Positions 4,191-49,900 of a stretch of 64,000 nucleotides of DNA are shown piece after piece. A program made the position numbers and the translations under genes. The notes under the pieces are model-generated. The model searched no databases and was not told the origin of the DNA. It saw only the letters and a program-made list of their open reading frames with translations. How positions within the stretch are numbered: position 1 is the first letter of the stretch; the number at the start of each line of letters is the position of its first letter. Source of the stretch: Anthoceros angustus (Eukaryota > Plantae > Anthocerotophyta); NCBI GenBank assembly GCA_010909165.1, contig MU008172.1, positions 1,313,962 to 1,377,961 on the forward strand, read 5' to 3'.

Positions 4191-4199
4191 AGGAAATGA

Positions 4200-27045: not shown

Positions 27046-30000
27046 TGGATGGAACCTTCTCAGGTGGTGGTAGTATATGTGACTGGATCCGTGCAACTGC
27101 GAGTGCTGGATGGGGATTTGCTGCCAACTATGGTGAATGGGTGGAAGGTTAAGTACCTTCATGAGTACTGTTGTCGCAGACGCGAAAGCGGTGAGGAGGG
27201 AGTAATGGCATAAAGTTTGGAGCAACAGCCCAAGCGAGCCGGAGGAAGAGCAGACTTGATTTTTTGGCTAAGAATGATTGAAGGGATCATGCCGGGATTT
27301 TACGAAACTTGAAGGCTGGAGTTGTAGGATCTTTGTGGGAGGCGAGAGGATATCTCGGGGAAAAGCAGGTCAAAATGACCCACAGTGAGATGGAAGGCAG
27401 CCGAAGAAGTGAGGCGGCGGCACTACCGTGAGGGTCGCTCACACTACGCCAAGAGGTCGAGAGGAAGAGCGCAGACTACGGGTGAGGCTGGGGCGTCTCG
27501 GCCAAAAGGGAAAATTAGGATGGGAGATATCCACTATATGCCCACCAATAGTGGACTAGATAAATGGGTCGAATAGGAAATTAAAAGCTAGATTGGGCCG
27601 TTAGGAAACTAGGGGAAATAGTATCTTAGTATAAGAGGAATTGGAAACTCAATCAAGCTGTGGAAAAGGTGCCACGTGGTGCATATCCAAGGCGAGTAGA
27701 TTGGTAGTTACCATTCCTAACCCCAAGTTATCTTTATAATCTGCATGTGTGTAGGAGGTCACAACTTGAAGGTGAGGAAGCGCCAACAGGAAGGCGCCAC
27801 ACCAAGAGTAGAAGAGCCCCACATTACACGATGTACGTGCGCTGCGGGGATAGAGAGGCGCAAGCTAGGCGTAGAGGAGGAAAATAGGCAAGACAAGTAG
27901 GGTGCAGAAGAAGAAGGAAGGAAAGGGCCGGGTGGAAGGAAGAAGGCAATGCTTGCCCAAGCCCAAAGGTGTTGGGAAGAGCAAGGCATGTCAAAATTGA
28001 AGAGAAATTGCGAGAAGGGACTCTCAACTTGCTGGAAGATGTAAGAATCCGTGAAACGCCCTTAGAGAATTCCTTCTTTCGAAATCACAGCAATTGGAAA
28101 CTCGTCCTGGAAAAGCAAGGGTATAAGAGCTAGGGGAATTGTGAGCAAGGGCGAGGTCAAGGCCAGGGTGTGTGTGTGGAAATTGCAAGGAGCTGGAAGG
28201 TTCTTGGCATCCATTCAATTGTCCATCTCGAGGCCAAGCATGGAAAGACCATTGCCTTTTATGACACTCGGAGGATAGGCATCATCAAGCGCTGCAGCAT
28301 CAAGGCTGGAGGACTCTGCGAAGGAAGAGGAGGAAGCAGTGGTAGAACCCGAGGGGTTGCTGCCGGAGGAGGAGGAAACCTCCATGAGCGAGCCCCAGAG
28401 AGGAGCTCAAGAGATGCGAGGATAGGCCAAATGGTGTATAGGGAGACGCCTACCATGGTAGGTGCACACCCTACCGTGATAGGAACAACACGTAGGGAGT
28501 GGAGTGGGTGGGTAGGCAGCCCTCAGTGAGGAAGGGGGTGGAGTGCCTAGCACATGTTGCGCGGTGAAGGCCAAGGATGAAGAAGATAGAAGAGAGCTGA
28601 AGTTATGGTGCACCAATGCTAGTCATTTGCAAGAGGAGGCCATGGCGTGCGAAGCATGTGGAAGTACTTGCGTGGAGTAATGATGTGAGGATGGCATGAT
28701 AGGGCCGTGTGCTGAACTAGGAGAGGCCATGGTAGAGCTCTCATGGCAAGCTGAATTTGCAGCTGGGCTGCAAGATGGAGGTGGCATAGCCACAGGAAGG
28801 TAGTATTGCAGATGGGCTGCGATATGGAGAAGGAATCGCAATGGGGTGTGCATCATGAAGGCAAAATTCGCAGTTGGGCTGCAAGTAGGTGTGAAGGGAG
28901 GTCGTTGTGGTGGCCGCGAGGAGAATTGGGCAGCAAGGTAGGCTGATTCGAGAGTTGGTCAAGGAGTTCGCTAAGGAGAAATGTGGAGAAGGAGCTTGGT
29001 GAGGAGTTCAATAATGAATCACTAAAATGTATGTGGCAAGATATGCACAAGGAACTTGGTGTGTTGGATATGTGGATATAAGAACTCCAGAGTTAAGCGT
29101 CCTATGGGCGGATCAGTACTCAGATGGGGTGCCTTTTGTGTGAGGAGTATGAGCTTATATTTGCAAAAGACACAGGAGCTGATTGGGAAAGTTCTTAGTA
29201 GGGAGTTGCAGTGCCGGCACATTTTGGAGGCTGAGGATTGAGCTTTTTCCTTGGGTTTTGGGGTAGGATGGTCTCTATGGGAGCGCCTAGGGCCAAGGAG
29301 ATGCAGGAATGTTGCTCTTGCACAAGAGCTGAAGGATTGATGACTTAAGAGCCTTCTTGGTGCAAACCAACTAGGGTCTTGAATTTGTGCAAGATGGATG
29401 GAAAGGATCCTTAGATTCATGGTGGGGATTGATGGCTACGATAGAAATTAGAGGTTATGGCTGGCTGTGCGAAATAATGGATGGGATATGGCCACATGCT
29501 TGCAGCAACCACTCAAATCTATGGCTGCAATTTAGGAGCTCTGTTGCTATAATTGTCGCATGAGAAGACCTGGGCATCTAAAAGTGCAGAGAGGGAGTGA
29601 GAGCTAGAGCTGTGTGCGCTCTCAGTGTGTGTGCCTTCTTAAGAGTGATGCCATCTCCTCTTGGTGTTCTCTTTTCTTGTGGCACCAATTTCTTGGGTCT
29701 TGGTGTGCCTTGGCTTGGTTTTGAGTGAATTTCTTCTAAGAGGGATGTCCTTAGTGTTCTTGGTGCTTAGCTTGGTGTTTGTTCTCCTCATGGGATTGCT
29801 AAGAGCCAAGCAGGATGAGGTGGTTCGGAGGAAGCGTGTGGATGCCGTGAAGGGTTTCGGCCAAGAAACCCCAACTCATGAAGCGCATGGTGGTAGTTTG
29901 GAGTGTAAACCCATTGCCAAAAATATTGGGCGATGGCATGTGTGTGGAGGCCTACAATAATTGTGAAGAGGAGGATGCTTGGGCCACACGATGATGATAG

Positions 30001-32104
30001 GGAGGCCCTCATGCAGATTAAGCCGGGGCCTTAGATTTTGATGAGGTCACAAGCGATATGGACTCAGGAGTTTGGAGAAGAAATGGCGAGGAAGGAGCCT
30101 ACAGCAGGGAGAAGGCGACCTACGGTAGGTCTGTCGAAGGAGGCAATGGATGCAAGTGCTATTGAGGGAGCGATGGTAGGGAGGCAAGTACTTTGGCCCC
30201 ACAGAGATGTTAAGGAGGAGGTTGTCTCCCTAGGAGAATGAAAAATCACAAAGAGGAGCTCAACCTACCAACATAAGTGCAGGGAAGGAGGTCACTTGTT
30301 CCACAAGTGAGGAGGATGAGTCCTCGGCGCCAAAGGAAGGAGATGGCGCAGGGAAGCAGGTGAGGTCACCCTACCACGGTGAGTGACCACCCTACACGGT
30401 AGTGCAGTGCGTGGTAGGCCCACCACCCTCGCGTGACGGCTGTGAGGCGGTACCACAGGCGTGGGACTGAGGGGAGCCGGGCCACGAGGCTTTGAGGATG
30501 AAGGGCGGGGTCGAAGATACCCTAAGATGATGGAGTGGTGGTGGGAGCAACCGGGAGGAGAGAGGCAGGGGTCCGACCCGTGAGAAGGGAGGGTGAGGGA
30601 GAACACCCCACGGATAAGGGAGGCAGGCCGAGAGGAGACCAACGCAAAGAAGGCCCGGAGGAATTAGTGACAACATCGGTCAAATGGGGAGGAACCTTTG
30701 AAGACATGCTCCATAATAGGTATGGACAAATCAAACAAGAAAGGAGCAAAAGGATCTCAGGAGACCATCACCGATGGAGAGGAAGAGAAGGAGATAGGGA
30801 CGGACTACCATGGTAGGTAGTCACCTACCGATGCCGGACTACGCGTAGGGTGCCTTTGAAGGAGGCCGCGGTGGAGGCTAGAAAAGGCGCTGGCGGAGCG
30901 CGATTGCTGGATGGCAAGAGGAATCAGGCGCCGCCCAGCGGAGATGGAGGAAGGGGCAGATTGTACTTGCCCCAAATTAGGAAGATGACAAAAGTGGGGA
31001 AGGGGCAAGAGCAAAAGGAGGCGAGGCCAATCCACAGAGAGGGTCCCCGCAAGATAAGGTGGAATGGTCAATGACCATAAATGCTAGATGAAGAATAGGA
31101 AGGACGGTGATGTAACAACATCCTTAAAGACTTAGGTGAAGTTGCTAGAATAGAATTTACCAAGGATCGGACAATAGACTTAGGTGCCAGACATTAAATC
31201 TTGTAGGAAATAATAGAAAATTGGAAAAGGTGACTGCGGTAGGGTCACCAAGGGAGGTTGTATGTGGAAGGCCTCCTATAAGAGGAGGAGGATTTCACAA
31301 AGTAAAGTATCATGTCTTGCGCTTCCACGCTCGAGTCCTTTGCCATTCTGAGAGGAATTTCGTGTGAGCCAACCACGTCACAGAGGAAGTCGCGGTGGTC
31401 GGAGTGCTTGGTGGAGGACTTGCTCTGCAAGTGCCTAAGCGAGTTGCTCCCCTTGTGAATGGTTCTTTGTGAAATTGCTTTGCTTTGGGTGTGTGGCAAA
31501 TGCCGGAGAACTCTCGGCTTGAGGGTAGACTACAGGAAAGACTCCTGGAGGTTCTCGTTGTCACAGTGTCAAACTCATACCGGCCCAAGGAAGAACTTCT
31601 GGTGGAGGCGGACCCAGGCGGTTGTGCCGTAAGGCGGTCGAAACCAGTGCCAGGCGAGGTTAGAATAGGAGGAAGAGGATGAGAAGATGAGTAGAGGATT
31701 AGAGGTGTAGGTGTTAGTGGAAGGCCACAGAGGCCCTAAGGGACGAATCCCAAACTGCAAGTAAAGGCGCTCACAGTGGAGAAGTGGTCTTAAGTAGGGA
31801 AATCGCGGTGTGGATCGGGGGTCCACTGGGCGCCGTGATAGGCTCCTCACTGGCGGGACACACAATTGTTTGTCGTGTAGGTTGAGGTTGGCATTTTGGA
31901 GCGGTGCAAGTGTGCTGTGGAGGAGTAGAGGCGCCTTGCTTGTTTAGAAAGAGAAGTGTGTCTGCGGTGGCGATCGGGCATCACAAGACCTCGAACTTTC
32001 ACACAAGTCTCATGGGACGAAACCCAGCGTGAGCGGCGATTGGGATAAGTGTGGCCGCTATAGTGGGAGGACCTCGGGAGTGCCCCGGGTTTTCCCTAAC
32101 CACA
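27046..32104 (+). mobile_element. Ty3/Gypsy (Tat/Athila-like) 3' portion, copy B, 5'-truncated inside the integrase tail
   Basis: 27046-27156 translates as WMEPSQVVVVYVTGSVQLRVLDGDLLPTMVNGWKVKY (GPY/F-type integrase end). Extra-ORF remnants follow, then a PPT at ~31090-31110 and the LTR. Confidence 0.85.
31111..32104 (+). repeat. 3' LTR of Gypsy copy B (~994 bp)
   Basis: TGTAAC...AACCACA, homologous to 10473-11446. Confidence 0.8.
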
Positions 32105-33000: not shown

Positions 33001-33523
33001 CCCGAGAACCTGAAATTTTTTTTGGATGTATTTCATATGTTTTTGGATTTTTTGCTTATTTTGTGCAAATAGGCTTGCACACTGCCACATTGGGTGCGTA
33101 AACTTGTCTGCGCACTCATCTCGTTCCGTCTGTTTTCTAACATAAATGCTTGTATGAGATGAAGGGTGGACATGCAAAAATAGCCTATAACTGATGGTTC
33201 TGCTTATTTTCACCCCTTCAAAATTGCAGTGTCCACCCATGGATGTGGTACATTGTGACCAAATGAAAATACAAGGTGTGGCGCCGCGACTTTGAACACC
33301 ACATTTAAGTTAGCAAACACCCTTATCGTGATGACATCAGTATCAGCCAGTCATGTGTCATATAATACCATCCAGGCTACAACCATGCATTTCAGTGACA
33401 CATCGTGCACCTTCAAACCATGCTAAGTCGGTAGCGTCGGTCACTCCCATTCCATGATCTAAGTTTATAACAACAAAACAAAACAAGAATCGACATAATT
33501 GTCAGACCTCATCAGAGGTTCGA

Positions 33524-34005
33524 GCTAAATGCGTCAGCATCCGCTCAAGTTAAGTGGAGAGTTCCTAGTCCACAAAAAGCGCGCATCATCAGCGTGAGAA
33601 TGTGGGCTCATGCTCACTGATCATGCAACCTATTGTTCCAACGGATGAATTGCATAGAAAAGAATGACAATCGTGAGCCTTTGCTCGGTGATCTCGCGAC
33701 CGGCGCTTTCCGACTGAGACTCTCTGGCGGACTCGGCTACCAACACGGGACCTCTTAAGCTCGTCCCGTCTCATCGTCTCCATCTAGGTGCCCAGCCTGA
33801 TTCTCTCCGCTCCATACATCACTCCTCGGTAACCTTGTTACATCATCATTCATCTTGGATTCTCAAGCAAAACTTAAATCTCGCCCTATTCACATAGGCA
33901 CCGGCACTATTGACCTAATCGTGCTTCCATTTACCACGCATTTATACCCACATGCGAATTAACCTATGCCCCAGCCTGGCCCTACATATCATGATGGCGG
34001 TGACA
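33524..34005 (-). repeat. 3' LTR-like repeat of the DNMT-bearing Gypsy
   Basis: ~480-bp collinear match to 40927-41422. Confidence 0.8.
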
Positions 34006-34207
34006 CATGTACACACCTTCAAACCATGCTAAGTAAGTGGCGTCGGTCACTCCCATTCCATCTAAGTTTATAACAACAAAACAAAACAAGAATCACGACA
34101 TAATTCGACCTCATTCCCAGTGGGCGAAGGGCGTCAAGCCCGCAACATCAAGCGGAGAACCAAACAACCAAGAAGACTCACATGCCAGCGCTCCCAGTAC
34201 CCTTACT

Positions 34208-34335
34208 CCGACAGCAGGGCAATACCAAACACCGGCACCTCGGTGAGTGGTGGAGACAAACAAAATAGATGGAATCCACCATTGCATCAGTCACACAACA
34301 ACATAAGCTCCGGATCGTCTGTTGGCGGCATGGAT
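34208..34335 (-). pseudogene. PHD finger at the pol C-terminus
   Basis: DYPC..[29 protein letters not shown]/WYCPA, a C4HC3 pattern with one stop and frameshifts. Confidence 0.8.
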
Positions 34336-34399
34336 AATCGGAAGGTGGCACCCAATCCGCATACGATCGTGGGGTCCAGTTGGGAAGATGGCAAGGAGC

Positions 34400-35600
34400 A
34401 CAATTCTTCATGTGCTCTTGAGGATCGTCCGTCGACCCTTGCAACACCAACACACATTGTCGGCACCTCTTTAACTCGCAATACATGTCTACGAGTAGAA
34501 GGTTCCAGTATTGGCGATCATCTCGTAGATAAACATAGTCTCCGTGTGAAACTTCTTCAATTTAGGCGGAAGTGGCCGCATGCGAGTGTAAGCATAGCGG
34601 CGTGTCTCGAGCAATCGAAGGTTAGCCATAGCCATGGGCATAAAATAAAGCTACCGCTCACCAACGATCGGGCCCATGTGGCGGGATCATCCGGGGCCAC
34701 TACGATGCATTTCCTTGGCAATGGAGCGGGAGCAGGATCCACCCAAAGAGCAAGAAATAGGGAAAAATGGGCCAAGCGTGCTTACTCATACGATACCCCA
34801 TCGCCACATACGGCGCGAGTCCCAATCAACTTGAGGCATTGTCAACAGCAGTTTCGTAAACTTGCTTAATGGTACAGACCAAGCGCTCGCCAACCCATGG
34901 GGATGATCTCGACTAGTTCGTCGATGATCAATGAAAGCATGATCCAACAATCTGAAATTCTCCACGAAACTCCGTACCACGATCGAGACATTCGCCAAAC
35001 CGACTAAGCACATCTTTGTAAAAAAGGCGTGCTCCTCGAGCTCTTATCGGGCAAAGCAACAATCTCAGCCCACTTAGAAAAGTGTTCTACCATCACCATC
35101 ACATAAACATTACCCCGTGCTGTCTTAGGCAACTCACCAATAAGATCGCAAGACCCGGTGAAGAAAAGACCCACGATAGGTAATGGCTGGGCTGCGATGG
35201 CTTGATATTAAAAGAAGCCTTTACCTTTGCTCGCATTGGGCTATCGGATCACGAACTTGACCATACATGCCACTCCAATGAGGAGCCAACAAACTATCGT
35301 TCGTTTGGCAATGCCCCATGTCGGCATGAGCCAGCTTGACCAATCATGGCGGCGGCACGGTCGAAACGCTTCTTTGCCGGTCTGCATCGAGATAACCATC
35401 TCGCCAATTGTATCGGCCGCCCGTTCTTTGAATCGTGTTTTACGCTTGTACACCCTAGGGTATGAACCGGTTGCAAATAATGCATGGTTCCGAATCATCC
35501 AAATGTCTCGCTCATGCCAACAATCGGTATAAGCAGGCACAATGCTCAAGTCTCCCAAAGCGGCGACAGGCCATCTAGTCACCATCCCATTCTCGTCAAA
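34400..35600 (-). pseudogene. Integrase (disrupted)
   Basis: DHRRTSRDHP.GLA core motif at ~34880-34930 and EHMKNCAPCHLPN tail at ~34385-34415. Position follows RH. Confidence 0.75.
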
Positions 35601-36850
35601 ATCTTGTCGTGCCTATGGTCTTCTTAGATTCCACGGATGCCGTGATAACAAACAAATCGGCGTGCGGTGACAAGCTCCGGACGATGAACAACCTCAAAAT
35701 CATAATCTTGTAAGGTCATTGCCCACGAGCCAACTTGCCACTCAATTGGGTGTTAGTCATCAACCACTTCAAGGCGATGGTCGTCACGGTGTAAACTGCG
35801 CCCATACAAGTAAGGCCGAAAATGACATACACCACGGCCGCCAAACACTCCCTTCATAACTAGGGTAATTACTCTCAGCTCTATTGCAATCTGAGAAGCA
35901 TACAATTACACGTTCATGACTGCATCATCAATTTGGGCGAACCCAAACCAGTGACTCAATCCAAGTATACTGTGAATGGTTTGTCAAAATCGGGTCTAGC
36001 CATGACGAGCATCTCGATCAACTGTCCTTCAACATAAGAAACGCTTGCTCACACGCTCCAATCCCAAGCGACATTCTTGCGTAACAACTCATTGAGAGGC
36101 TTGGCAATGCGACTAAAATCCGTAAATGCGATAATAATTGCGAGGCCCGGATATGCCCTTAACGTGGACACGCTGGTAGGCGCAGTACCTCAAGATAGCT
36201 GAACCTTAGCGGCGTGAGGCATAATGCGTTAGGCACAATCCTATGACCTAGAATCTTGATCATTATCAACACCCAGCTCACACTTGGCGGGATGACACTT
36301 CAATCTTGCCTTCGGCCGAAAATAGGTCCTCCAAGTGAACCAAATGTGTCAAAGTCTCGTGAACCAACACATCATCGATGTAACACAAGAGATGTGGTGC
36401 ACCCGCCAACACCTTGTCCATGATTCTCTGAAACGTAACAGGAGCATTACGGAACCCAAAAGGCATGAACAGCCACTCCCAAAGTTGTTGCGAGCCGTGG
36501 AACGCCATCTTCTTGATGTCCTCATCCGCCATGGGCACCTGGTTAAATCCCTGACGCAGGTCCAACACCGAAAAAAACGAAGATTGTCCAATCTGATCAA
36601 ATAACTCCTCCGGGGTAGGCAGATACGATCTGCTGCCGGCTGCGTTCGAGGCCGATAATCACCACATGCGTTTTGGTCCACAATCACGACTATCCTTCTT
36701 GGGTGGAAGAGCATTGGCAAAATCGACGTGGATGGCGAATCAACCTTCATGTAACTCCTTACGTCGTCCACGATCTCCCACTCGGCGGGCTAAGGCGGTA
36801 CCGGCGCAACCGGCTCATTAGTGGTCGGTGAACACGGAACTTCATCATTA
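35600..36850 (-). pseudogene. Reverse transcriptase / RNase H (disrupted)
   Basis: LDLRQGFNQV, MPFGFRNAPVTFQRIMD and YIDD (36371-36382); PDFDKPFTVY at the RNase H start (~35965-35995). Confidence 0.95.
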
Positions 36851-37179
36851 CAAGTACCGGCTCCTTCATAGAAGGCAAAACAATCTCGGTGCCCAGCGGT
36901 CACTTAACTGCCTCGATCTTGTCAGCGAGACCCATATTCCGAAACATATCGAGGCTCAAGCCGCTGCGTGATGATAAACCGGTCTCCGAATCCGAATTGC
37001 TCGACCATACAAGCCGAAACCGAATGATGGACACGAGCTATTGACTCCCCAGCATCCAGGTATAAGAGATCGAATCAGAAAGGGCAAGTGAAAGACATGG
37101 ATGACATGCTCCAGCCACGTGAAATAAACCCACAAAAGCGGAGCACGACAAGATTTGAAACACTAAACAAATGGTAACA

Positions 37180-38030
37180 AGCCGTGGCATAGCAAATCCA
37201 TAGCACGCCGAAAGAGCAATCCGATGACGTAAGTGGCGCCAACATGTAGCATATCAAACCCCATGATACGTTCTCGTTCTTCCACGATGGGCTCCTCCCA
37301 TCGTTGAGTCGAACATTCAACAACAGCCCATTGCCAGCCCACGATCGCATAAGAACCGGAAAAGCCGGTGTGGTAGTGCGGCGGCATGCGGCCGATTAGT
37401 TGGAAACCACGGAGACTTCTCCACCTTCACCGGACGGACTATGATATGGTTCCAAAACATCTTGCAACCGGAGCTGATCATCACGAATCTTTGAAGTGCC
37501 AATTGCAAAATTGTGCATGGAGCCCAATTGGTCCAATAGTGCGTAAGCGGTGGGCAAAGCTACGACTGCGACATCCATGACAAACGGAGATCCCACCACA
37601 TGTTGGATCAAGCGTGGCATCGACAAACAAGTGCGGCCGAGGATCTAAATGTGCGGGTATTCTCGAGCACATACACCATATGAGGTGCACTGTTGAAGCC
37701 AATGCAAAATACGAGCCAACAAAAAGCGATCCGCTCGTGGATCACGCAAACCCGCACCTTGGCCAGCAGGAAAACCCCGGCACTCCCATCCGATCACCGG
37801 ATCAACCGGGCAAAGCACGGATGTGAGATTGGTGAATGTCAGACATCTTGAGGTAAGCGTGAGCGTAGTCACAAATCGATCGAAACAAACTAGATGGCGA
37901 GAATGTCTGCAGCGATGCCCGACAATCTGACCGGACAATTGTCCGGTAATAATATTGGCGCGCAAAGCGCCGCGTAATAGAGCCTCCAAGCGATTACAAA
38001 CCTAATTCCAATACCACATAACCGGCCTAC
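37180..38030 (-). pseudogene. C5 cytosine DNA methyltransferase domain (DNMT3-like) inside the Gypsy pol
   Basis: Motif I GYVVLEL..LEALLRG (38023-37969); RLPQDV/DI; motif IV VD.VIGWECRG..AGQGAGLRDPR (Cys at 37780-37782); motif VI YVLEN (37673-37659); motif VIII SFAHRLR/YWTN (37561-37527); motifs IX-X WEEPIVEERERIMGF...RAMDL (37300-37193). Confidence 0.88.
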
Positions 38031-38449
38031 ATGGGCCAAATAATGGTATGTTGATTCAAAGGTGGAAACAGCGTTAGGCAGACTCAAAACGGCTTTGTCC
38101 GGCCTCAATCCCGGCCGCATGAAATTCTTTAAAGCATACTCCACATGCAGGCGGCACTCTCTTGCTGACTCGACAACGGGGCTCGCGAGGCAATGGTATC
38201 CACATCATCGAAACAGCAGGTGGCATCATCCTCTGTAAAATCCAAGAGATGTGATGATCATCACGAGGTAACAAAGGATAGCATCGGACATGCTTGGCGG
38301 TCGACTAATGCGTCACCGGCTAGCTGATGATGTAAGTCAAAGGAATGTAGGCTGCGACCACCCGCCGTAATCCGGACGATAATATACGCTCCGTCCGGTT
38401 GTCAATCCCAACTCGGTGAGCGAAATTCCTGCCAGGATGTCATAGTTGG

Positions 38450-38750
38450 TGGCGGTGATACCAAAGCAGGCAAGTCCGGTGAACAACATCGTTAGTACCG
38501 AGTTTCAAGGCGATAGAAGCGGACACCTGTCTCGCCAGGCGGCTCGATGGCCCTGGCGGTCGAATACTCCACGGGGCTCTTGAGAGCATCTCCCCACGTC
38601 TGCGTACGCCAAGGCTTGACCGATGATAACAGGTTGTGCTCCGTGTCCAAGAGCACCACCGTGGTGCTACTCCATTGTGATAACACAACTTTGATTGTCA
38701 ACCACGGCATGGTTGATAGGCACTGCATCCGCTGAGTAGGCTGGATCATG
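38450..38750 (-). pseudogene. Aspartic protease
   Basis: VLLDTG AQPVIIGQALA is restored by one 1-bp correction at ~38640. Confidence 0.75.
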
Positions 38751-39499
38751 GGATGACCATGACTCGAGCCAATTGTGACATCACCTCCTTGCCGGTCGGT
38801 TGCTCAAAGCTAAGCCCCTTGACCAATTGTAGCCGCCGGCCGTAAGCCGACTCCTCGGGTGGTACAGCGCTCGGGGGCCCGTCCGAGCAACCAGGGCTGC
38901 TGGCGTGGCGGCATATTGATCGCCAACATCCGGATCCGCTAAGGTGAACAAAGGAGCCGTGCAATCTTACACTCGAAGTTGACCATGCACGGCGGGAACA
39001 GATGGTTCCTACCAACCTATGATGATTGTGGTGGCTCCAAAGCCTCCATCAAATGATCCGCACCACGTGAATGGAAGTTCACGGTGACAATGGCACAAAG
39101 GACTTGGGCATATGACTACGGGTGATTGGTGCGAGCAGCAAGTGTTACATAAGCACACTGCTGATCATCATGCCCCAGCCATGTTGCGAGGCATCCTCTT
39201 CCTCCACATCCACCTTATGAACGTACATGCAGTAGGGATCTCCATAATCCTCACCTTGACACCAGCAGGGTGAAGACACGCACCGCAGCCACACCGGTAG
39301 GTTTAGTCGTCAGCGAGGCGGTCAACATATGGCGAGTAGTGGTGTGGGCGACTGAGACTCAAAGCCGTCATCTTCTCGAGATACAGCACCACCTTGTGTT
39401 TGCCCTTATCCGCTTGACTTGCTCTTAGTGAGACACCCCCCATGCTTGGGCTGCAGGTCAAGGCTCCGATGGCTCTGCGGTGTGGGAGTTTCTCCTTCA

Positions 39500-40650
39500 C
39501 TCCCCGATACGCCCGTTGGGAACTTACGAAAACATCTGTAACAACATGACCCGTCTTGTGGCAATGTGTACAATATAATGCTTCCACGCACATTTGCAAG
39601 CGGTGACAAATGATCGAGCGCCCAAGTGATTACACATAGTAATCGTGTTGGTAGGCGGATAGACCACCTTAGCCATCTTAACTTTGTCGGGCTTAAGCAC
39701 ACCCAGTGATAAATGCACCGGAAGATACACCCTTCCCGGCAAACATGGTGCGATAATGAGCATACGACTTAGTGTGCTTATAAGCATAAGCGACGCCAAC
39801 TCCTTATTACGCCTCCTGGAAGACGATCTAGAGTGTATTGATCTCCATATTTGTCCTAGCGAGGTAAGTGAAAATGAAACAATGGTTAGTCTCGAAGCGA
39901 CCCGAAACTTTTGTCTTTGCCTCTTGATCGATCAACATACCGATTCCATCCACAGCTTTTCAGCGGCGAAATGCCATTTACCTTTGTCTCTCCTTCTTTC
40001 GTTGGAAAGCGACAAGTTCACTATCTTCTCGGGGTTTTAAATGGAAAAGCCTTCTCCAATATAGTGAAAAACTCCTCTGATTGGCAAACTTGGGTACAAC
40101 AACGTGCTCATCAATCCGGCGATTAGCCCTCTCTTGAGTCATGCGACCAGCAGGCCCTTACCGGCGTGGCCTTCCTGCGCAACTTTGAGCTTGATGATGA
40201 GCCATTCATTCTTTGCATGCAAATTATTGTATGCAGTACCGCGCTGTGATAAGCGGATTGGGAGAAAGCCGATTGCCGACAAATCGGGTGTGTGCTTCAT
40301 ACAAATCCAACGCCTCGTCACTCATATATCCGGAAGTTGTTCAAACATATCTTGATGAGAATATGCGGACCATGCTTAAACTTCACCACCGGTAAGGAAA
40401 TTGAAAAACATTAAGAAATCTCTCAGCGTTTGAGTCCGAATGCTGAAAATTTATCGCCCTAAGCGGCCGATCAAGCTCGCCATCTCTTACGAACCACTCG
40501 AATCTTGCCTCTTCAGAATCGTCCTCGTGATCACCAGCGTTTACAATACCCGACAAGGGTGACCAGCTAGCCAATTGTTGACCAGCATCACGCGTAGCGC
40601 GCCTCCCTCCTTTGTCAAATCGCTCCTGGTTCAAGTTACGTAAACTCCAC
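39500..40650 (-). pseudogene. Gag with CCHC zinc knuckle(s)
   Basis: CTHCHKTGH at 39546-39572 and a second degenerate knuckle at ~39600-39645. Position is 5' of PR. Confidence 0.7.
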
Positions 40651-40926
40651 CGTCTCGGGTAACCCCTCTTCGACAGTAACCTGCGGATGACGAGGAACCA
40701 CTCGCGATCTCAAGCAATAGCGTGGCTCTTCATCCTCCTCGTGACATGCATTACCAGCGGACATGTCAGAACCACGCGAGCATGAGTAGAAAACCTCCTA
40801 CCTCGCTAACCAATGTCGATGGCGGTGATGCTTCTCTCACGACCAGCGAGCAAATTGTCATACCTCCCCTCCTTCCACCCAAAGCCAAAATGCAAAGACT
40901 CACTTCCCGGTGAGCGATTGTGAGAG

Positions 40927-41422
40927 TAGAGGTTCGAGCTAAATGCATCGACATCCGCTCAGGTTAAGTGGAGAGTTCCCTAGTCCACAAAAAGCAGCAT
41001 CATCAATGTGCGGTGTGGACTCATGCTCACTCGATCATGCAACCTATTGTTCCAACCGGATGAATTGCATAGAAAAGAATGACAATCGTGAGCCATTGCT
41101 TTCGGCGATGCTCAGCGACGCTTTCCACTGAGACTCTCTGGCGACTCGGCTACCAACACGGGACCTCTTAAGCTCGTCCCGTCTCATCCGTCTCCATCTC
41201 GTGCAAGATTCTCTCCGCTCCATATCACTCCTCGGTAACTTTGTTCGCATCATCATTCATGCGCGGATTCTCAACCAAAAGCCTAAATCTACTGGCGCCC
41301 TATTCACATAGGCACCGGCACACCATTGACCTAATCGTGCTTTCTGTTACCACGCATTTATACCCACATGCACGAATTAACCTAGAACTGCTTATGCTAG
41401 CCCTACATATCGCAGCATGACA
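40927..41422 (-). repeat. 5' LTR-like repeat of the DNMT-bearing Gypsy
   Basis: Match to 33524-34005. No clear PBS was identified. Confidence 0.75.
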
Positions 41423-42507
41423 CCCTTAAAAAAAGCCTAAAACAAAAGGAATGCACATTTTCGCCCAAAAGACGACGGGATTTTAGCCATAACTCCTTTT
41501 TGCCGGAGAAACCCCTTTCTACCCAAATGTTATTCTATAACCATATACTTTGTATAAATATTATGTACTTTTTATTATGATAATGAATGCCTAAGATCTT
41601 TGAGCTTGTCCTTGATTCTCGTCATGACTTTCTGTGCATGTTAATCAAACTGCTGGCTACATACACATCGCCTCTTCTTGTCCTATGGTCTTATGTTTGT
41701 AGCTACCTACTAAGACGTAAAGCGCTCTAGAGGAGCAAGGCGGCCATACACATGCCTGCGGCAAGCTCACAAATAACGAGAAGGCAATAGATTTGGGTAG
41801 AGCCATGCTCTCTTCTTGCACAGCACTATGGAGGAAGGTCTGAATACCATGCCGGAGATATCCTGCTTCGTGGCAGCCTATATAGAGGACTTTGCTGTGC
41901 TCACTTTCGACGAGCGTCGGACAGGGTGTGGCAACGGTAGCATGAGGCAATTTGGCTATTATCTTGTGAGAGCTAGTACCTCGTCAAGTTCTCTTGCTCG
42001 GCCCAGTAGATCTACCACACATGTGGCAGTAGTTCACCATGGAAATGATGGAGTGTTGTCTGCTCGTACCCTCGATGAATTCTTGTAACTTAAAAATCTA
42101 ACTTACAATTTTCTACATTCATATTTCTCTGGGAAGTTCATTTTGAAAATAAGTAATAAAGTTATGGCTAAGCTAACTTTCCAAACGAGTTGAAACTAAG
42201 CATATTTGACATATTCCAACCTTCAGTCTCATGTTTGCATATTCTCCCATCATTGCGTGTGCCAACTACTAGGGACTACAACATTATGAAATAGGAATCT
42301 ACTCAATAATTTTTTTTGTCATCAGGTTCAGCTCCTGACACTTGTGGCATAAACCCAACTTCCGTCTACAATGCATTGATAGGTTGAAGTTGGTATCGGT
42401 GGCTTACTCCTGATAAATTGAAGCAATCTCTTGAACAACTCTACATTGCAAGGAATATGCAAGTTGCCTTTTTGAAGAGGCAACTTGCATATTCCTCAGG
42501 TCAGTCC

Positions 42508-43902: not shown

Positions 43903-46900
43903 TGTAAATTATCGGAGCACGATCATTTGACTAAGGCCAGAAGGCTTAGAGACTACACAAAGTTTTGTGTGTGTGCAAAAACGATGAATAATCAAAGGAA
44001 TAATAAAAGGTCTCATATGTGTTCATTATATACCACGTAACCCTAAATATCAAACGGTATGTATATATCAAACTCAGCTAGGTTAAGCGAATAACAGATT
44101 AACCCTTAACACTCCCTCTTAAGCTTATGAGCTTAACGAGAGAAACATAACTCCAGGCATAAACCCGTTTACAAAACCCAAAACCCCGTACGCGATCCCA
44201 TGCGAACCATGAGATAAGGGACTTCCCACGAGAAGCAGGCGGCTAGGTATCACAAGGAACAAGCTCCTGGCGGCGCACGCTTGGGCGTAAACCGGTGGTT
44301 GGGGCGATCCATCTTGAATCCTGCAATCAAGTCCGTGGCTACAAGAATGGAGCTCCACCTGTGCTCACCGCCAAATCTCAACTCGCGCTCTTCATCTTTA
44401 CCGTCATGGATTTTCATTCTTGACCATGAAGACAAGGCGGCGGTGAGCCTCGAGTTCCTCAGCAGGAGGCGGAAGAGAAGTGGAGGCCTGGTAACCATCC
44501 CAGCATTCCCACGGTCCACAGCGACGAAACGCAGGCGTCCTCTTCATCGGATGTCGTGCCTCACGAGGGAGGAACAACAAAGGATGGGAGTGGGACGGCC
44601 CGGACATGAGGTCGGTAAGCATGTGCGCTTGGGAACTATCATGGGCAGAATGTGTCCTTGGTGATAGGCAAAGTGAGGCAGGGATACCCACATCTCGAGC
44701 CTCCAACTCGTGAACAAGCGAGGAAAAAGGCGAGGTCTTGTCGAGAGCTAGAGGACACTATCAGTGCTAAAAAGGTGGACTTTGACAAGGTTTGAAAAGC
44801 AGGCATCTGAGATGATTAGCTATATCCCTCACGCTTCATCCATCTGATCCTGTGTGTCCTTTGTTGTTCAAAATTTGTAGACTCTGAGGTATTGTCGTTG
44901 CTTGTGCGGCTTAAATCATCCAGGAGGCGGTGGAAGCTTGTTGGCAAATTAAATCACAGGTGTTGTGCGAAAACATATATATGTTGTTCACAACAAGTTC
45001 ACAACAACCCTAAATAGACTTGGATGCTCATATAAAACCAGATAAAGTACACCTTAGATTTGTTCATAAGGCATAATCAATGCCTAGGCCTTCCATATAT
45101 TCATAATGTTTATGTTTGGGAAGGCCCTTAGTAAGGATGTCGGCCGTGTTAAGTTACATTGATACATAGCTAACTTTCACGATTCCACGTTCGACCACGT
45201 CTCTAACATAGTGGTGCTGTATTTCTATGTGTTTCGTTCTTGCATGGAACTTAGGATTGGCAACAAGTTCCAAAGCTGACATATTGTCACACAGGAGAGG
45301 AGTCGGCATGTCTTGCTTCTGTCCTAAATCGGACAAGAAGGTGCGTTCCCACTCAGCCTCCTTGGATGCCTCTGTTAAACTTTTATACTCAGCCTCAGTT
45401 GAGGACAGAGCTACTGAAGTTTGTTTCTTACAGCTCCAATTAATAACAGCTGATGAGAGGAGAAAGCAATACGTGGAGAGGCTTCGACGTGACTCTGTAT
45501 CCGACGCCCAGTCAGCGTCTGTGAAGCCCTTCAAGGTAAGCTGCTCTCCACTGCTCCTGTATGCGAGCCCATAAGACTGCGTCCCCTTTAAATAGCGAAA
45601 GACACGTTTAGGCTCATCCAATGCACCGGCACAGGTTTTCAGTGTGACAAGGTCGTGAGAATATTGAATATCGGGTCGTGTCCAGTTAGCTATAAATATG
45701 AGGCGCCTGTGCATGCACTGTAGGGAACTGTCCATCTCAATCTAAATGCACCTTGTGGACACTGTAGGCTAGTCAGCTTAGTTCCTAGTGCATAGGGTGT
45801 GGTAGATGGTCTTGCCTGTTCAAGCTTAAATTTGTGCAGCAGTTCTTGTACGTATTGGTACTGGTGGATAATAATTAGCTTCTCAGGTCTTATCCTTAAC
45901 AAGCGAACTTTAACTCACCTATGTCCTTCATATCGAATACGCCCTTAGCATCTCTTTAACCTCTTGCCGGTGGTGACTACTATTAGTATACATCGTCAGC
46001 GTCTGATGATAGAATAACATATTCAGCTCCCTTGGTCAACTTGTATCTGATTACCATCAGTGAGCTTTGAACAAAAGAGTTGTTGATCGGATGTTCGTGG
46101 ATGGTGAAATACCAAACTACGCCACTTTGTTTGGACCATAGATGGTCTTTAATAGCTTCGAACACCTTAGGATGTTTAGGATCCACATAGCCTTGATGGA
46201 CCATGTATAAGTCTTCGTCAGGCACCATATAAAAAGGCATGCATCGTCCATTTGATGCGGTCTAAATCAAATTTGCGCCGATTAATATCATCCTTATTGG
46301 TGAGCTTTCTGGCAGGTGAAAAGGTTTCCTGGTAGTCTAGTCCCTCAACCTGTGTGAATCCTCGTGCAACCAGCCTAGCCTTATATCTGGCGATTTCTCC
46401 CTTAGCATTCAGCTTAAGCTTAAATACCCATTTGCAGGAGATAGGTTTTCTGCCAGGCGGGAGGTCCGCTAGCTTCCATGTCTTATTCTTGACTAGGGAA
46501 TTGTACTCATCATCAACTGCATGCTTCCATTTATCCTTTTCGGATCCACGAGTAAGCCTCATCAAAGACTTAGGCTCCGGTGTAGAGTGCTTGAAGCGAG
46601 TGCATGTCTTGCATATCTTTATAGTCAATTGATTCATAACGTAGCTCTTTCCTGATCGGAGGCGGTTTAGTTGACCGTCTCGCGGAGGATCGAGGTTCTT
46701 CATATTGAGCGGCTAGTAGAGGTTCATTTTCTTGGTGGGTCCTCCTCAGCGGTGCATAGCCCTCATCTCCCTCTGCTGGCTGCATGATAGTTAGGTTGAT
46801 GATCATCTTCTTGTGGAATAGGAGGTGGATCTGGATTAACGGCGTTTGCGGTGATCTTTGTCTGGTGGGGTATAGGTGAGCAGGGAGGTGTACCCCAGTG

Positions 46901-49900
46901 GGCCAGTGGTTCATCTCCCTCGTCAATTGAATCATCAGAAGGGAAGTCTACAGTGTCATCATCTGTGGTAGGTAAAACAGCTCCCTCTGTGGTGGTTTGA
47001 CCTAAGATGAGAAGTTTGTCAATTTCCAGAAAGGTAACTGATCGAGCTAACACCACTCGTTGTTCGTCGGGGTGATACAATTTGTAAGCCTTAGACTGTT
47101 CACTGTACCCAATGAAGATGAGTGCTTGGGCTCTTGGATCCAGCTTCTTTCTCTTCTCCTCTGGGATGAGAGCAAAAGCACGGGAACCAAAGACGCATGA
47201 TGCTTCAAAGGTTTCGCTTCCAATAAGCCTCATATGGAGTCGCAAGGGGCCAGGCTGGTGAAGAGTCGGTTCGAATATAGGTTAAACGATTGCCTCATTA
47301 ATATTCTTGAGATAAGTTAGCCCACAATAACATGCTCTGGTCATGGCTAATAAGGTCTGATTTTTCCTTTCGGCCACGCCATTTTGTTGTGGGGTATATG
47401 GAATTATGTCGTATCGTTGTATCCCCCTCTCTTGTAGGAAGCTATCAAATGTTGTGTTAACAAATTACATTCCATTATCGATCCAGAAGATATTTAACGG
47501 GTACACATACATTTTCCATGATCGTGACCAATCATGGAAGAGTTCAAAGGTATCACTCTTGGTGCATCGGGAAAGTCCAAGTGTCACAGGAATAATCATC
47601 GATGATGCATAGGTAATAGATAGAACCGCCAAAGGGCCAGGACATGTATTTTGCAGAAATGCATGCACTAACTCGGGGGCAGCGGATGCTGTGAGGCGTG
47701 AAAAGGGTGAGCTTTTGCTTGGCAGCAATGCAAGCTTCACAAGAAGGTAAATCTTTGAAAACACAGGCAAGGGTTCGGTGACATTTCAGCAATGACATGT
47801 CTATAGCTTATTTACATGACCAAGTCGTGCATGCCACAGGACAGCAAGGCTTTGGGACTTCTTAGAGACAAGACTGGCCTGGTGTCTAAGGGTACAAATA
47901 TTCAGTCTGTAGAGATCATTATTTAATGTACCTTTGAATGCCAGCATGGAAGGTTCTGACCTCTTATAGAAGAGACAAGTATCCTCACTGGCTTTCATAT
48001 CATATACTCGAAGTTGCATCAGTTTGCTGAGAGAGACCAGATTCTTAGCCATTGACGGCACAAACAGGGGTTCATCCAAGGTAAGAATTGATCCATCGTG
48101 TAGAGTAAACTTGCATGTTCCATGAGATGGAAGCTGGATTGATTTCGTTCATCTCCCAATAGCACTCTTTCAGCTATTTTGTGTGTCTGTAGCAAGTAAA
48201 ATTGCTCTTTACTTCTGCAGATGTGTGAAGTAGCGCCAGAATCCAAGTACCATCCATCTTCATCACATATGGGGCGGGCAAAGCAGACTGTTAGTATCTT
48301 CACCACTGGTTTGGCGTCACCTGATGTCTTCTCCTTAATAGCAACAGTTGCAGAACCTTTAGGAGTGCGCTTAGGTTCCACGCTTTTCTTCTTACATTCC
48401 CCAGCGGTGTCGGCTATACCACGATTCCAGTTTCACGGGCGCTTTGATGAGCCAGTGAGAATCAAGTTTGGCGAGTTTACCTCCGGCTTTGCCTTTTCCT
48501 TTGAAGGTTCTCGACGCCATTAATGCCTTCTCCGTTTTACTCTTAGGAGTTCTGAAGAAAGCGCTGCTTTCTTCTTCCGATATAAAGCACCTATCACCTC
48601 TTCCAAGGTGATGTTTCCGATGCCTCAGAAACTACGGCATTGGCACTGAGAGGGCCATTCGACTTGTGATAAAGGCGATAAGATGGAGGGAGCCTTGCGA
48701 GTTCAGCTACAACATGACCTCTTCCATCTTGGTTCCGATAGAGAAGCCATTTGTGCTCTAAGGTGGAATTTACTTGTGAATGCACCTTATCTCCTCTTCA
48801 TCTTTAAGGCATAGAATTCATGTTTTACACCAACAAGAGTCATCACGTTGGTAACTTTGTATGTTTCTCCATGTGTCTAGATATCGGAGGCTTTATCGAG
48901 GAACTCCACCTCGGGTATGAGATCGCATGAAGTCCCCTATCAGAGAGCTATGGCAATCTCGTCTGGTCCCAATCAACAATCGATCGTGAAGGTCTTTGGA
49001 TTTGCAATTGATTTGGTTTGGGAGTAGTTCCATCTACTATTTTCCACACGTCGGGCCAATAAAGTTGACTTCATTCGGATCGCCATACAGTATTGTGTGC
49101 CGTGAATCGATCTTTCTCTTCGGCTGCGTGTATGAGGGTTTATGACTACGGTGATTCTCGTTACAGATCGGGGAGTGTCACTAGCTGTCAAGGCTAAGTG
49201 CTTGGAATAGGCTACTTAGGCGTCTATAGACAAGGATGGATCTGCGGACATATAAGACTAACAAGATAACTAGAGCTATGGCTTTAGTAACACAGCCCTG
49301 ATCCTACACTTTCTTAATTATGTGCATAAATAAGTGTCGGCGTAATGCGTGTATGGTGACCGTAGATGCAGACGAGAATACACATTTGTAGCTATGTGAG
49401 TTTGTCTATGCTCACTAGTGATTCCTCTTCCAATACTCAAACACGTTAGCAAATAAAAAGTGATCAAGGGGTCATGAGAGAACAGAAACAAAAAGCAGTT
49501 AACGCGTTTGATTCTTTGTACTTTTACCAAAAGCGGCGTTGGTTGGTGTTTCAAAATGAGCAGACGCGAAGGCGCCTCTTCATTGCTCGCAGGAAAATAA
49601 CCAGATCACAGCAGGCGTGGATCCTTGCTTCAGCAGTCGCGAGGGGCCTGTCGGGTGTACACCTGGCAGTACTCGATGCGGCGCTTCAGGTGAGATCGCG
49701 ACGCTTGCAGTCTGGTGTTTCCCACGGCGCAGCGGATTCAGAGAATTGAGCGCCGACAACCTCCTCGATTGGGAGATCTGGGTGACGCATACTTGATTTG
49801 ATGTTCTCTAATCTTGGCTGTCATCTCAGCTATGCTCCGAAGGTGATTCATGATCGTTATATTTCGTAGATGAATTGCTCTTAGAAAACTCTGATATTGC

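What the first reader, a model, noticed from the sequence alone, without database searches (positions are those of the whole stretch)
37180..38030. Gypsy retrotransposon carrying its own DNMT3-like cytosine DNA methyltransferase between protease and RT
Seen: stitching the three minus-strand frames gives all main C5-MTase motifs in canonical order. These are I (VVLEL-G..LEALL), IV (VIGWECRG..AG.GAGLRDPR), VI (YVLEN), VIII (DVAV.SFAHRLR.YWTN) and IX-X (EERERIMGF..RAMDL). They fill the otherwise unexplained ~1.4 kb between PR (38.6 kb) and RT (36.8 kb). Known: motif VIII closely resembles DNMT3 (DA..VSAAHRARYFWGN), and the order is not the circularly permuted DRM order. Retrotransposon-borne DNMTs have been reported from dinoflagellates and charophyte algae. 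Inference: this window looks embryophyte, so a self-methylating or chromatin-writing LTR element may exist in a land-plant lineage. The enzyme would be cut from the pol polyprotein and could methylate the cDNA before integration.
Basis: partly seen in the sequence, partly recalled or inferred. Interest (0 to 1): 0.95.

Follow-up and report, generated by a model that had tools for sequence, protein, structure and literature searches.

The report
Broken DNMT3-type methylase inside Gypsy retrotransposon
A decayed jumping gene of the Ty3/Gypsy kind in a plant genome (other agents' notes call it probably a hornwort) carries, between its protease and reverse transcriptase, the remains of a DNA-methylating enzyme of the DNMT3 type; such cargo is published only for a freshwater alga, and this copy cannot work as assembled.

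Summary
The core of the finding holds. A minus-strand LTR element (33514-41411) has direct LTRs and Pfam pieces in the order RT, RNase H, integrase, PHD. A custom frameshift-tolerant alignment placed the window's best match to a DNMT3-superfamily profile at 37450-37849. The score was 34.9 bits, against 15.6 +/- 1.9 (max 22.6) elsewhere, and 0 of 500 shuffles reached it. The match covers motifs IV, VI, VIII and the start of the target-recognition region, in canonical, non-permuted order. With motif VIII masked it is still the top match. Reversed and scrambled profiles score at background.

The signal depends on cheap frameshifts: z is 9-10 at penalties of 3-5 bits and 2-3 at 7-10 bits. No single reading-frame piece reaches PF00145, PDB or 1.84 billion proteins.

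This copy has at least six frame breaks, stops, and Glu in place of the catalytic-loop Pro. Some breaks may be assembly errors.

A Gypsy-DNMT3 is published only for the alga Klebsormidium. This one has plain LTRs and a PHD finger, so I call it a new variant.

First readers of this scan noted the same architecture more than 100 times elsewhere in this genome.

The parts
40928..41411 (-). 5' LTR
   Evidence: blastn of the element against the window: 85.6% identity to 33514-33990 over 500 columns. In the MAFFT pair, 414 of 466 aligned bases are identical, with 16 gap events.
39300..40710 (-). gag-like region (inferred), with a degenerate CCHC-like knuckle CTHCHKTGH near 39546-39572
   Evidence: Position upstream of PR and direct reading of the ORF pieces. 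No Pfam hit.
38400..38700 (-). Protease-like stretch: LLDTEHN (about 38639-38647, Asp motif with Gly to Glu) and YDILAGISL (about 38418-38444)
   Evidence: Direct reading, compared with the retropepsin motifs D(S/T)G and ILGMDWL from my own knowledge. No Pfam hit. This stretch produced a spurious 'motif I' hit of 10.3 bits.
38061..38096 (-). Best motif I candidate, KAVLSLPNAVST (DNMT3: VLSLFDGIAT); the glycines of FxGxG are absent
   Evidence: Chain alignments to the prokaryotic DNMT3-like HMM and to fish DNMT3. Weak on its own; see the next part for the N-terminal sub-profile test.
37968..38026 (-).
   Evidence: Frameshift-aware alignment of the N-terminal sub-profile, HMM 15-33: 14.1 bits, reached by 36 of 728 segments (P about 0.05); fish chain alignment.
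37735..37809 (-). Motif IV: PVIGWECRGFPAGQGAGLRDPR. The catalytic Cys is kept; the Pro of the PC dipeptide is Glu
   Evidence: hhalign against alignment A1, columns 67-98, P 0.009; part of the 34.9-bit alignment.
37617..37682 (-). Motif VI: HMVYVLENT.., in a different frame from motif IV
   Evidence: Block of the 34.9-bit alignment, HMM 108-129. Block score 5.0 bits, rank 53 of about 128,000 positions, with the independent bacterial profile.
37521..37596 (-). Motif VIII across three frames: VGSPFVMDVAVV / SFAHRLR / YWTNWA (DNMT3: NPVMIDA.EVSAAHRARYFWGN)
   Evidence: Frame changes occur at about 37561 and 37538-37541. The DNMT3B alignment printed shows the same motif in solved DNMT3B.
37450..37494 (-). 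Start of the target-recognition region: SKIRDDQLRLQDVLE (fish DNMT3 exon: DKLELQDCLE)
   Evidence: hhalign P 0.1 at the collinear position.
37322..37387 (-). Best IX-X candidate: MPPHYHTGFSGS / YAIVGWQWAV (profile: LPDNYTEAVSDS / KKLLGNGWTV)
   Evidence: C-terminal sub-profile gives 15.8 bits, reached by 8 of 510 segments; hhalign P 0.12.
37190..37282 (-).
   Evidence: Chain alignments to fish DNMT3 and to L022 pick ERERIMGF against ELERIFGF / ECERFLGF. Bacterial motif IX block 7.5 bits, rank 31. The combined profile scores it below 37322-37387.
36281..36790 (-). Reverse transcriptase
   Evidence: PF00078, E 3.6e-16, 59.9 bits, on 36281-36658.
35959..36048 (-). RNase H (piece)
   Evidence: PF17919 RT_RNaseH_2, E 0.065; position after the RT.
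35007..35343 (-). Integrase: H2C2 zinc finger (35224-35343) and catalytic core (35007-35207)
   Evidence: PF17921, E 0.053; PF00665 rve, E 0.0012.
34150..34335 (-). PHD finger after the integrase (..ELMLLCD / CNGGFHLFCLSPPLTEVP / GVWYCP), split over frames
   Evidence: PF00628, E 0.02, on 34206-34286; direct reading.
33514..33990 (-). 3' LTR

Best explanation
The stretch is the decayed, or badly assembled, catalytic domain of a DNMT3-type cytosine-5 DNA methyltransferase. It is an integral part of the pol region of a Ty3/Gypsy LTR retrotransposon. The layout is gag, protease, DNMT3-like domain (about 38096-37320, roughly 260 codons), reverse transcriptase, RNase H, integrase, PHD finger.

Shown: the homology, the canonical motif order, the position inside the element, and the broken state of this copy.

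Inferred: in intact family members the domain would be translated as part of Gag-Pol. It would either be released by the protease or stay attached to the N-terminus of RT. It could then methylate cytosines of the new cDNA or of DNA near the insertion site, as the Klebsormidium and Symbiodinium retrotransposon DNMTs do de novo at CG in yeast (PMC5890265). The PHD finger on the integrase would read a histone H3 tail state and steer integration, as chromodomains do in chromoviruses.

This particular copy makes no enzyme as assembled.
For: - Element anatomy: direct LTRs; RT E 3.6e-16, rve, H2C2, RNase H and PHD in Gypsy order.
- About 540 codons separate the protease ILG-type motif from the RT. 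I would expect roughly 100-130 from my own knowledge, so there is room for about 400 extra codons.
- DNMT3 profile: 34.9 bits, z 10, 0 of 500 shuffles, top of the window.
- The focal segment is also the top of the window for fish DNMT3 alone (29.5 bits, z 6.1), for the eukaryotic DNMT3 of L022 (28.5, z 4.7), and for the prokaryotic DNMT3-like HMM (30.9, z 7.0).
- With motif VIII masked it is still the top: 22.8 bits, 1 of 500 shuffles. Chain tests with masking: 0-1 of 400 shuffles and 3-4 of 400.
- The independent generic C5 profile gives z 4.6. Decoy profiles give null scores.
- hhalign places three pieces collinearly.
- The reference family is truly DNMT3-like: L020 hits DNMT3B and DNMT3A in the PDB at E 7e-33, against 4e-13 for the next non-DNMT3 class.
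- GC (0.51) and CpG o/e (1.05) of the DNMT stretch match the rest of the element (0.50 and 0.97) and not the flanks (CpG o/e 0.59 and 0.65). This fits an integral part rather than a later insertion.
- First readers noted the same PR-DNMT-RT layout in more than 100 other places of this genome. These notes are unverified.
Against: - No piece reaches Pfam PF00145, any DNMT in the PDB, or any protein among 1.84e9.
- Plain tblastn with Dcm or with L017/L020 does not single out the region.
- The statistic is my own and depends on a low frameshift penalty: z 2.2-3.3 at 7-10 bits.
- The DNMT3 references were fetched with a motif VIII pattern partly taken from this window. Only the masked results and the generic-profile result are free of that.
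- The ends of the domain (I, IX-X) are only weakly supported (P about 0.05 and 0.016) and have competing placements.
- No other copy could be examined, so stable membership of the domain in the family rests on unverified notes.
Confidence: 0.8

Rival explanations
1. Chance resemblance. The PR-RT spacer is some other, unknown pol domain, and the motifs come from choosing among three frames.
For: - All single-frame searches are negative.
- With frameshift penalties of 7-10 bits the region ranks only 3rd to 6th of 251 segments.
- Competing placements exist for motifs I and IX-X.
- A protease motif scored 10.3 bits as a false 'motif I', which shows how easily such motifs appear.
Against: - The null sequences had the same frame freedom, yet 0 of 500 shuffles and 0 of 498 natural segments came near 34.9 bits.
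- Four different references all put their window-wide best hit here.
- The masked and the independent-profile tests remain at P about 0.002.
- Decoy profiles are null.
- Motif spacing (IV to VI to VIII to TRD) matches DNMT3.
Confidence: 0.07
2. One-off capture. A fragment of a host DNMT3 gene or pseudogene, or of another element, landed in this one copy and is not a family feature.
For: Only one copy could be inspected. There is no second copy in this window. An odd 115-bp repeat flanks the 3' LTR, which shows the locus has been rearranged.
Against: - The segment is on the same strand as pol and in line with it, exactly between PR and RT.
- Its GC and CpG o/e match the element and not the CpG-poor surroundings.
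- No intron-like interruptions appear in the aligned part.
- Many first-reader notes report the same layout elsewhere in this genome (unverified).
Confidence: 0.08
3. The domain is a family feature but is not a working methyltransferase even in intact copies. It would be a degenerate DNMT3 fold kept for DNA or SAM binding, or for recruiting host factors.
For: - The motif I candidate lacks the SAM-loop glycines (PNAVS in place of FDGIA).
- The PC dipeptide reads EC and ENV reads ENT.
- A first-reader note reports another DNMT-Gypsy family in this genome with Cys to Ser and missing motifs (s1-258144, unverified).
- The element shows no CpG depletion.
Against: These substitutions are seen in a single broken copy and may be private to it. 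The Klebsormidium elements keep the functional residues and are under purifying selection (PMC5890265).
Confidence: 0.15

Closest known systems
KnitGypsy-Dnmt3 of the charophyte Klebsormidium nitens (de Mendoza et al. 2018, PMC5890265)
   Same: A non-permuted DNMT3-type domain lies inside the Pol polyprotein region of a Gypsy-superfamily retrotransposon in a streptophyte.
   Different: - The paper describes the Klebsormidium element's repeats as DIRS-like. This element has plain direct LTRs.
- This element also has a PHD finger after the integrase; 'PHD' does not occur in that paper's text.
- The host here is probably a land plant.
- Sequence relatedness could not be tested. The 118-codon piece found nothing among 1.84e9 proteins.
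- The position of the domain within the Klebsormidium pol was not available to me.
SymbioDIRS-DNMT3 and SymbioLINE-DNMT of Symbiodinium (PMC5890265)
   Same: Retrotransposons that carry a cytosine methyltransferase. Their DNMTs methylate CG de novo in yeast.
   Different: They belong to other retrotransposon classes (DIRS, LINE), have another host kingdom, and were acquired independently.
Host DNMT3 of animals and bryophytes (solved DNMT3A/3B structures; moss DNMT3, cited in PMC10952607)
   Same: Motif VIII of the form S.AHR.R.[YF]W.N, a D.L.LQD.LE stretch after it, and canonical motif order.
   Different: No PWWP/ADD or plant DUF partner domain was seen. The domain is embedded in pol, has no introns and is broken. 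The region from motif I to motif IV is very divergent.
Chromoviruses (Gypsy elements with a chromodomain at the integrase C-terminus; my own knowledge)
   Same: A histone-reader module is fused to the integrase C-terminus.
EpiLTRs, LTR elements with both adenine and cytosine methyltransferases plus a chromodomain (bioRxiv 10.64898/2026.05.21.726589)
   Same: An LTR retrotransposon that combines a DNA-methylation writer with a chromatin-reader module.
   Different: Their DNMT is sister to DNMT4, they also carry a DAM domain, and that paper reports them absent from Streptophyta.

Membership tests
C5 cytosine DNA methyltransferase (PF00145 type) | Significant match to the family profile | tested here: inconclusive
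   Single-frame pieces give no PF00145 hit at E up to 10. Frameshift-aware alignment to an independent phage/E. coli C5 HMM gives 27.4 bits, z 4.6, rank 3 of 251. A read-through with X at the breaks could not be submitted to Pfam, because the sequence has no reference and is too long to type.
C5 cytosine DNA methyltransferase (PF00145 type) | Motif IV with the catalytic Pro-Cys | tested here: inconclusive
   GWECRGFPAGQGAGLRDPR aligns to GSPCQGFS.AGK..NF.DPR (hhalign P 0.009). The Cys is present but the Pro is Glu.
C5 cytosine DNA methyltransferase (PF00145 type) | Motif VI, ENV | tested here: met
   YVLENT at 37659-37673, aligned to FLLENV. The Val is Thr.
C5 cytosine DNA methyltransferase (PF00145 type) | Motif I, the FxGxG SAM loop | tested here: not met
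   The best candidate, VLSLPNAVST, has no glycines. The N-terminal sub-profile gives only P about 0.05. This may be private to this copy.
C5 cytosine DNA methyltransferase (PF00145 type) | Motifs IX-X after a target-recognition region | tested here: inconclusive
   There are two competing placements: 37322-37387 (8 of 510 segments) and 37190-37282.
C5 cytosine DNA methyltransferase (PF00145 type) | Open reading frame | tested here: not met
   At least six frame changes and several stops between 38100 and 37320.
DNMT3 subfamily | DNMT3-type motif VIII (D...VS.AHR.R.[YF]W.N) | tested here: met
   VMDVAVV / SFAHRLR / YWTN, spread over three frames. The same motif is seen in solved DNMT3B and in vertebrate DNMT3 exons.
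DNMT3 subfamily | Canonical (non-DRM) motif order | tested here: met
   IV, then VI, then VIII, contiguous over HMM 52-173.
DNMT3 subfamily | Closer to DNMT3 than to other C5-MTase classes | tested here: inconclusive
   34.9 bits against the DNMT3 profile and 27.4 against the generic profile. DQLRLQDVLE matches the TRD of a fish DNMT3 exon. The DNMT3 set was fetched through motif VIII, and no tree was built.
Ty3/Gypsy LTR retrotransposon | Direct LTRs flanking the element | tested here: met
   33514-33990 and 40928-41411, 85.6% identical.
Ty3/Gypsy LTR retrotransposon | Pol order PR-RT-RNase H-INT | tested here: met
   RT E 3.6e-16, RNase H E 0.065, H2C2 E 0.053 and rve E 0.0012, in that order on the minus strand. 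PR is identified by motif reading only.
Ty3/Gypsy LTR retrotransposon | PBS, PPT, TG..CA ends, target-site duplication | tested here: inconclusive
   The LTR ends are blurred and no clear TSD or PBS could be seen.
KnitGypsy-Dnmt3 (Klebsormidium) | DIRS-like repeat structure with Gypsy domains | tested here: not met
   This element has ordinary direct LTRs. The Klebsormidium description is in PMC5890265.
KnitGypsy-Dnmt3 (Klebsormidium) | Sequence relatedness of DNMT and RT | not testable with these tools
   No Klebsormidium sequence could be fetched by reference. The exhaustive search with the 118-codon piece found nothing.

The most novel reading that the evidence does not exclude
A Gypsy lineage of a land plant (probably a hornwort) carries both a DNA-methylation writer (DNMT3-type domain) and a histone reader (PHD finger) in one polyprotein. 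It would have acquired them independently of the Klebsormidium elements. In reality it would be far less broken than this assembly shows, that is, recently active, and either self-methylating or escaping host CG methylation.

Two observations fit this reading. The element is the least CpG-depleted stretch of the window. Its 'decay' is rich in single-base indels and has a transition:transversion ratio of about 1.
Probability: 0.2. Interest if true: 0.8.

Novelty: new variant of a known kind. Interest (0 to 1): 0.55.

Why it matters
Retrotransposons that carry their own DNA methyltransferase are known from dinoflagellates and from one charophyte alga. They raise the question of whether mobile elements write their own epigenetic state.

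A family in a land plant with ordinary LTRs and an added PHD reader would extend the phenomenon to embryophytes. Methylomes, chromatin maps and transformation are available for some hornworts. That would give a system to test whether such cargo serves to hide the element, to target integration, or to disturb the host methylome.

This single copy adds little by itself. The value lies in the family.

Tried and rejected
- Pfam on eight single-frame pieces of the region: no PF00145.
- phmmer of three pieces against the PDB: no DNMT.
- Word-indexed search with the 118-codon piece: nothing. Exhaustive protein search with the same piece: nothing.
- ESM Atlas: noise, best score 0.75, DUF4096.
- The search for related loci in viral contigs with the DNMT piece and the RT piece: nothing.
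- The look-up of sequencing runs: none was listed. Expression and assembly errors could therefore not be checked, and read laying was not used.
- tblastn with E. coli Dcm and with the marine DNMT3-like proteins: the region is not singled out.
- hmmsearch on 50-residue windows in six frames, with the bacterial and the DNMT3-like HMMs: motif IV reaches only 3.5-3.6 bits, at the top of the noise.
- Ungapped block chain with the bacterial profile: no signal. Its best 'motif I' (38453) turned out to be the protease ILG motif.
- Chain tests with jump cost 12: not significant.
- Frameshift-aware test with motif VIII masked, using L022 alone: not significant.
- A read-through with X at the breaks was not sent to Pfam, the PDB or a fold predictor, because it has no reference and is too long to type.
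- No tree of the domain was built. The sequence is too broken and no Klebsormidium or plant DNMT3 sequences were at hand.
- Rfam on the window: nothing.

Full report
**Element.** A self-comparison of 33-42 kb shows two direct repeats, 33514-33990 and 40928-41411, that are 85.6% identical. Between them, on the minus strand, Pfam recognises:
- a reverse transcriptase (PF00078, E 3.6e-16, 36281-36658);
- a piece of RNase H (E 0.065, 35959-36048);
- the integrase zinc finger (E 0.053, 35224-35343);
- the integrase core (E 0.0012, 35007-35207);
- part of a PHD finger (E 0.02, 34206-34286).

This is the Ty3/Gypsy order. The protease is recognisable only by eye: LLDTEHN near 38645 and YDILAGISL near 38430. 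Every domain is cut into pieces of 30-130 codons by frame changes, so even undoubted domains give only weak Pfam hits. That matters when weighing the negative searches below.

**Negative searches.** The single-frame pieces of 37166-38204 hit no C5-methyltransferase in any of the following:
- Pfam;
- the PDB;
- the word-indexed protein search;
- the exhaustive search of 1.84 billion representatives;
- the ESM Atlas;
- viral contigs.

A profile of E. coli Dcm plus ten phage C5-methylases gave only 3.5 bits for motif IV in a window scan, which is the second-best locus of the window but still noise. An ungapped block-chain test with that profile gave nothing. Its top 'motif I' hit (38453, 10.3 bits) is the protease ILG motif. 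This is a warning about motif hunting.

**Getting DNMT3 references.** I scanned metagenome contigs for the pattern D-x3-V-S-x-A-H-R-x-R-x-[YF]-W-x-N. These are the positions shared by the window's stitched motif VIII and DNMT3A as I remember it. The scan returned eleven loci:
- vertebrate DNMT3 exons (L014, L015, L016, L023, L024);
- a DNMT3 gene of an unknown eukaryote (L022);
- five intronless marine proteins (L017-L021).

The marine protein L020:4473-5420:- hits solved DNMT3B and DNMT3A at E 7e-33. The next non-DNMT3 class reaches only 4e-13. It also has thousands of relatives, many of them named 'DNMT3A' by JGI. From these I built three references: a prokaryotic DNMT3-like HMM, exon-joined fish and L022 domains, and a combined DNMT3-superfamily HMM.

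**Tests.** I wrote a local aligner of DNA against a profile. It uses affine gaps and allows frame changes at a fixed cost. I ran it on every 1-kb segment of both strands and on shuffles of the focal kilobase.
- With the combined profile the focal segment scores 34.9 bits. Elsewhere the mean is 15.6, sd 1.9, max 22.6. No shuffle of 500 exceeds 22.8. A Gumbel fit (my own calculation) gives about 1e-6 per segment.
- The alignment runs from 37849 to 37450 and covers profile positions 52-173. That is motif IV (PVIGWECRGF..AGQGAGLRDPR), motif VI (YVLEN), motif VIII (VGSPFVMDVAVV / SFAHRLR / YWTNWA) and the start of the recognition region (SKIRDDQLRLQDVLE).
- The focal kilobase is also the best of the window for fish DNMT3 alone, for L022 alone and for the prokaryotic HMM alone.
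- Because the references were fetched through motif VIII, I masked those 18 columns. The region still tops the window: 22.8 bits, 1 of 500 shuffles.
- Chain tests with masking gave 0-1 of 400 shuffles and 3-4 of 400.
- The fully independent Dcm/phage profile gives 27.4 bits, z 4.6, rank 3 of 251 under the same aligner.
- Reversed and column-shuffled DNMT3 profiles score at background.
- hhalign, a tool not of my making, aligns three pieces at the expected collinear profile positions with P 0.009, 0.1 and 0.12.

**Limits of the tests.**
- The result needs cheap frameshifts. At 3 or 5 bits z is 9-10. At 7-10 bits z is 2.2-3.3 and the rank is 3-6 of 251.
- The ends of the domain are weak. The N-terminal sub-profile gives P about 0.05 and the C-terminal one P about 0.016.
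I cannot settle this from one copy.

**State of the copy.**
- There are at least six frame changes between 37810 and 37320, for example at about 37561 and 37538-37541, and several stops.
- The catalytic loop reads EC instead of PC, and the motif I candidate has no glycines. As assembled it encodes no enzyme.
- The pattern of damage is odd. The LTRs differ by 52 substitutions, 25 transitions and 27 transversions, and by 16 indel events in 466 aligned bases.
- Motif VIII keeps most DNMT3 residues and yet sits in three different frames within about 75 bases, with a further change before the TRD block.
- The element has the highest CpG o/e of the window, 0.87-1.07 against 0.3-0.7 in the flanks.
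- An old, methylated element should lose CpG and show a transition excess. Another agent's note on this genome says that breaks in one gene vanish in RNA of the species (s1-285826, unverified).
- So part of the damage may be assembly error in a poorly polished repeat. No run was listed for this stretch, so I could not test this.

**Host.** An intronless importin-5-like ORF (56814-58163, minus strand) is 75% identical to unnamed plant contigs. One of these comes from a JGI metagenome (L013) and one from a Logan assembly (L012). It is 65% identical to a Ginkgo fragment and 62% to Closterium and to angiosperms. This says streptophyte, most likely embryophyte. Other agents' notes say 'probably hornwort'.

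**Literature.** In the library I could search, Gypsy-DNMT3 is reported only from Klebsormidium nitens (PMC5890265). A 2025 survey (PMC12344493) and a 2026 preprint (10.64898/2026.05.21.726589) still cite only that case for streptophytes. A search for hornwort, DNMT3 and retrotransposon gave one chromatin paper with no such element. The Klebsormidium element is described as having DIRS-like repeats. This one has plain LTRs and a PHD finger. I therefore file it as a new variant of a known kind, in a new host lineage.

**Earlier notes of this scan.** First readers noted the same PR-DNMT-RT layout, often with the PHD finger, at more than 100 other places of this genome. This speaks for a family feature, but I could not check it.

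**Mechanism.** All of this is inferred. In intact members the domain would be made as part of Gag-Pol, next to the RT. It could methylate the newly made cDNA or the DNA around the insertion site. The PHD finger on the integrase would choose chromatin by the state of the H3 tail. An alternative is that the family's domain is a dead fold kept for binding. The degenerate motifs of this copy and the missing CpG depletion would fit that reading.

Noticed in passing
window 34000-42000: The DNMT-bearing element is the least CpG-depleted part of the window. Its CpG o/e is 0.87-1.07, against 0.3-0.7 in the flanks. Its LTRs nevertheless differ by 12% (K2P), with a transition:transversion ratio of about 1 and 16 indel events in 466 bases. 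This does not look like natural decay of a methylated element. Assembly error or escape from CG methylation are the options.
   Followed up: partly
window 33395-33512 and 34000-34114: A 115-bp stretch just inside the 3' LTR is repeated (87% identity) just outside it, so the 3' LTR is flanked on both sides by the same sequence. This may be a trace of recombination or of nesting in another copy.
   Followed up: no
L017-L021 (e.g. L020:4473-5420:-), proteins P0121-P0240: A large family of intronless proteins of about 300-320 residues from marine and other metagenomes is far closer to animal DNMT3A/3B (PDB E 7e-33) than to bacterial methylases (E 1e-11 to 1e-13). All 8000 scored candidates had E below 1e-5, and JGI names many of them 'DNMT3A'. 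Whether the source organisms are prokaryotes or viruses was not checked.
   Followed up: partly
L022:7400-8100: A metagenome contig (Ga0209960_1003236) carries a DNMT3 gene of an unknown eukaryote. It has all motifs, split into several reading-frame pieces.
   Followed up: partly
window 56814-58163 (-): An intronless 450-codon ORF covers only the N-terminal part of an importin-5/IPO5-like protein. It may be a retrocopy or one large exon.
   Followed up: partly
window 45154-47245 (-): A Ty1/Copia-type element has long open pieces of 193, 161 and 160 codons, far better preserved than the Gypsy element.
   Followed up: no
window 34150-34335 (-): A PHD finger follows the integrase (..ELMLLCD / CNGGFHLFCLSPPLTEVP / GVWYCP), where chromoviruses carry a chromodomain.
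   Followed up: partly
window 38418-38453 (-): The protease motif YDILAGISLTELGL gives the best 'motif I' score of the whole window against a bacterial C5-methylase profile: 10.3 bits, rank 1 of about 128,000 positions. It is a false positive worth remembering for motif-based reading.
   Followed up: yes
window 2000-10000 and 28000-32000: These are GC-rich stretches (0.50-0.56) with strong GC and AT skew and long spurious ORFs rich in Pro, Leu and Ser. They are probably tandem or satellite-like repeats.
   Followed up: no
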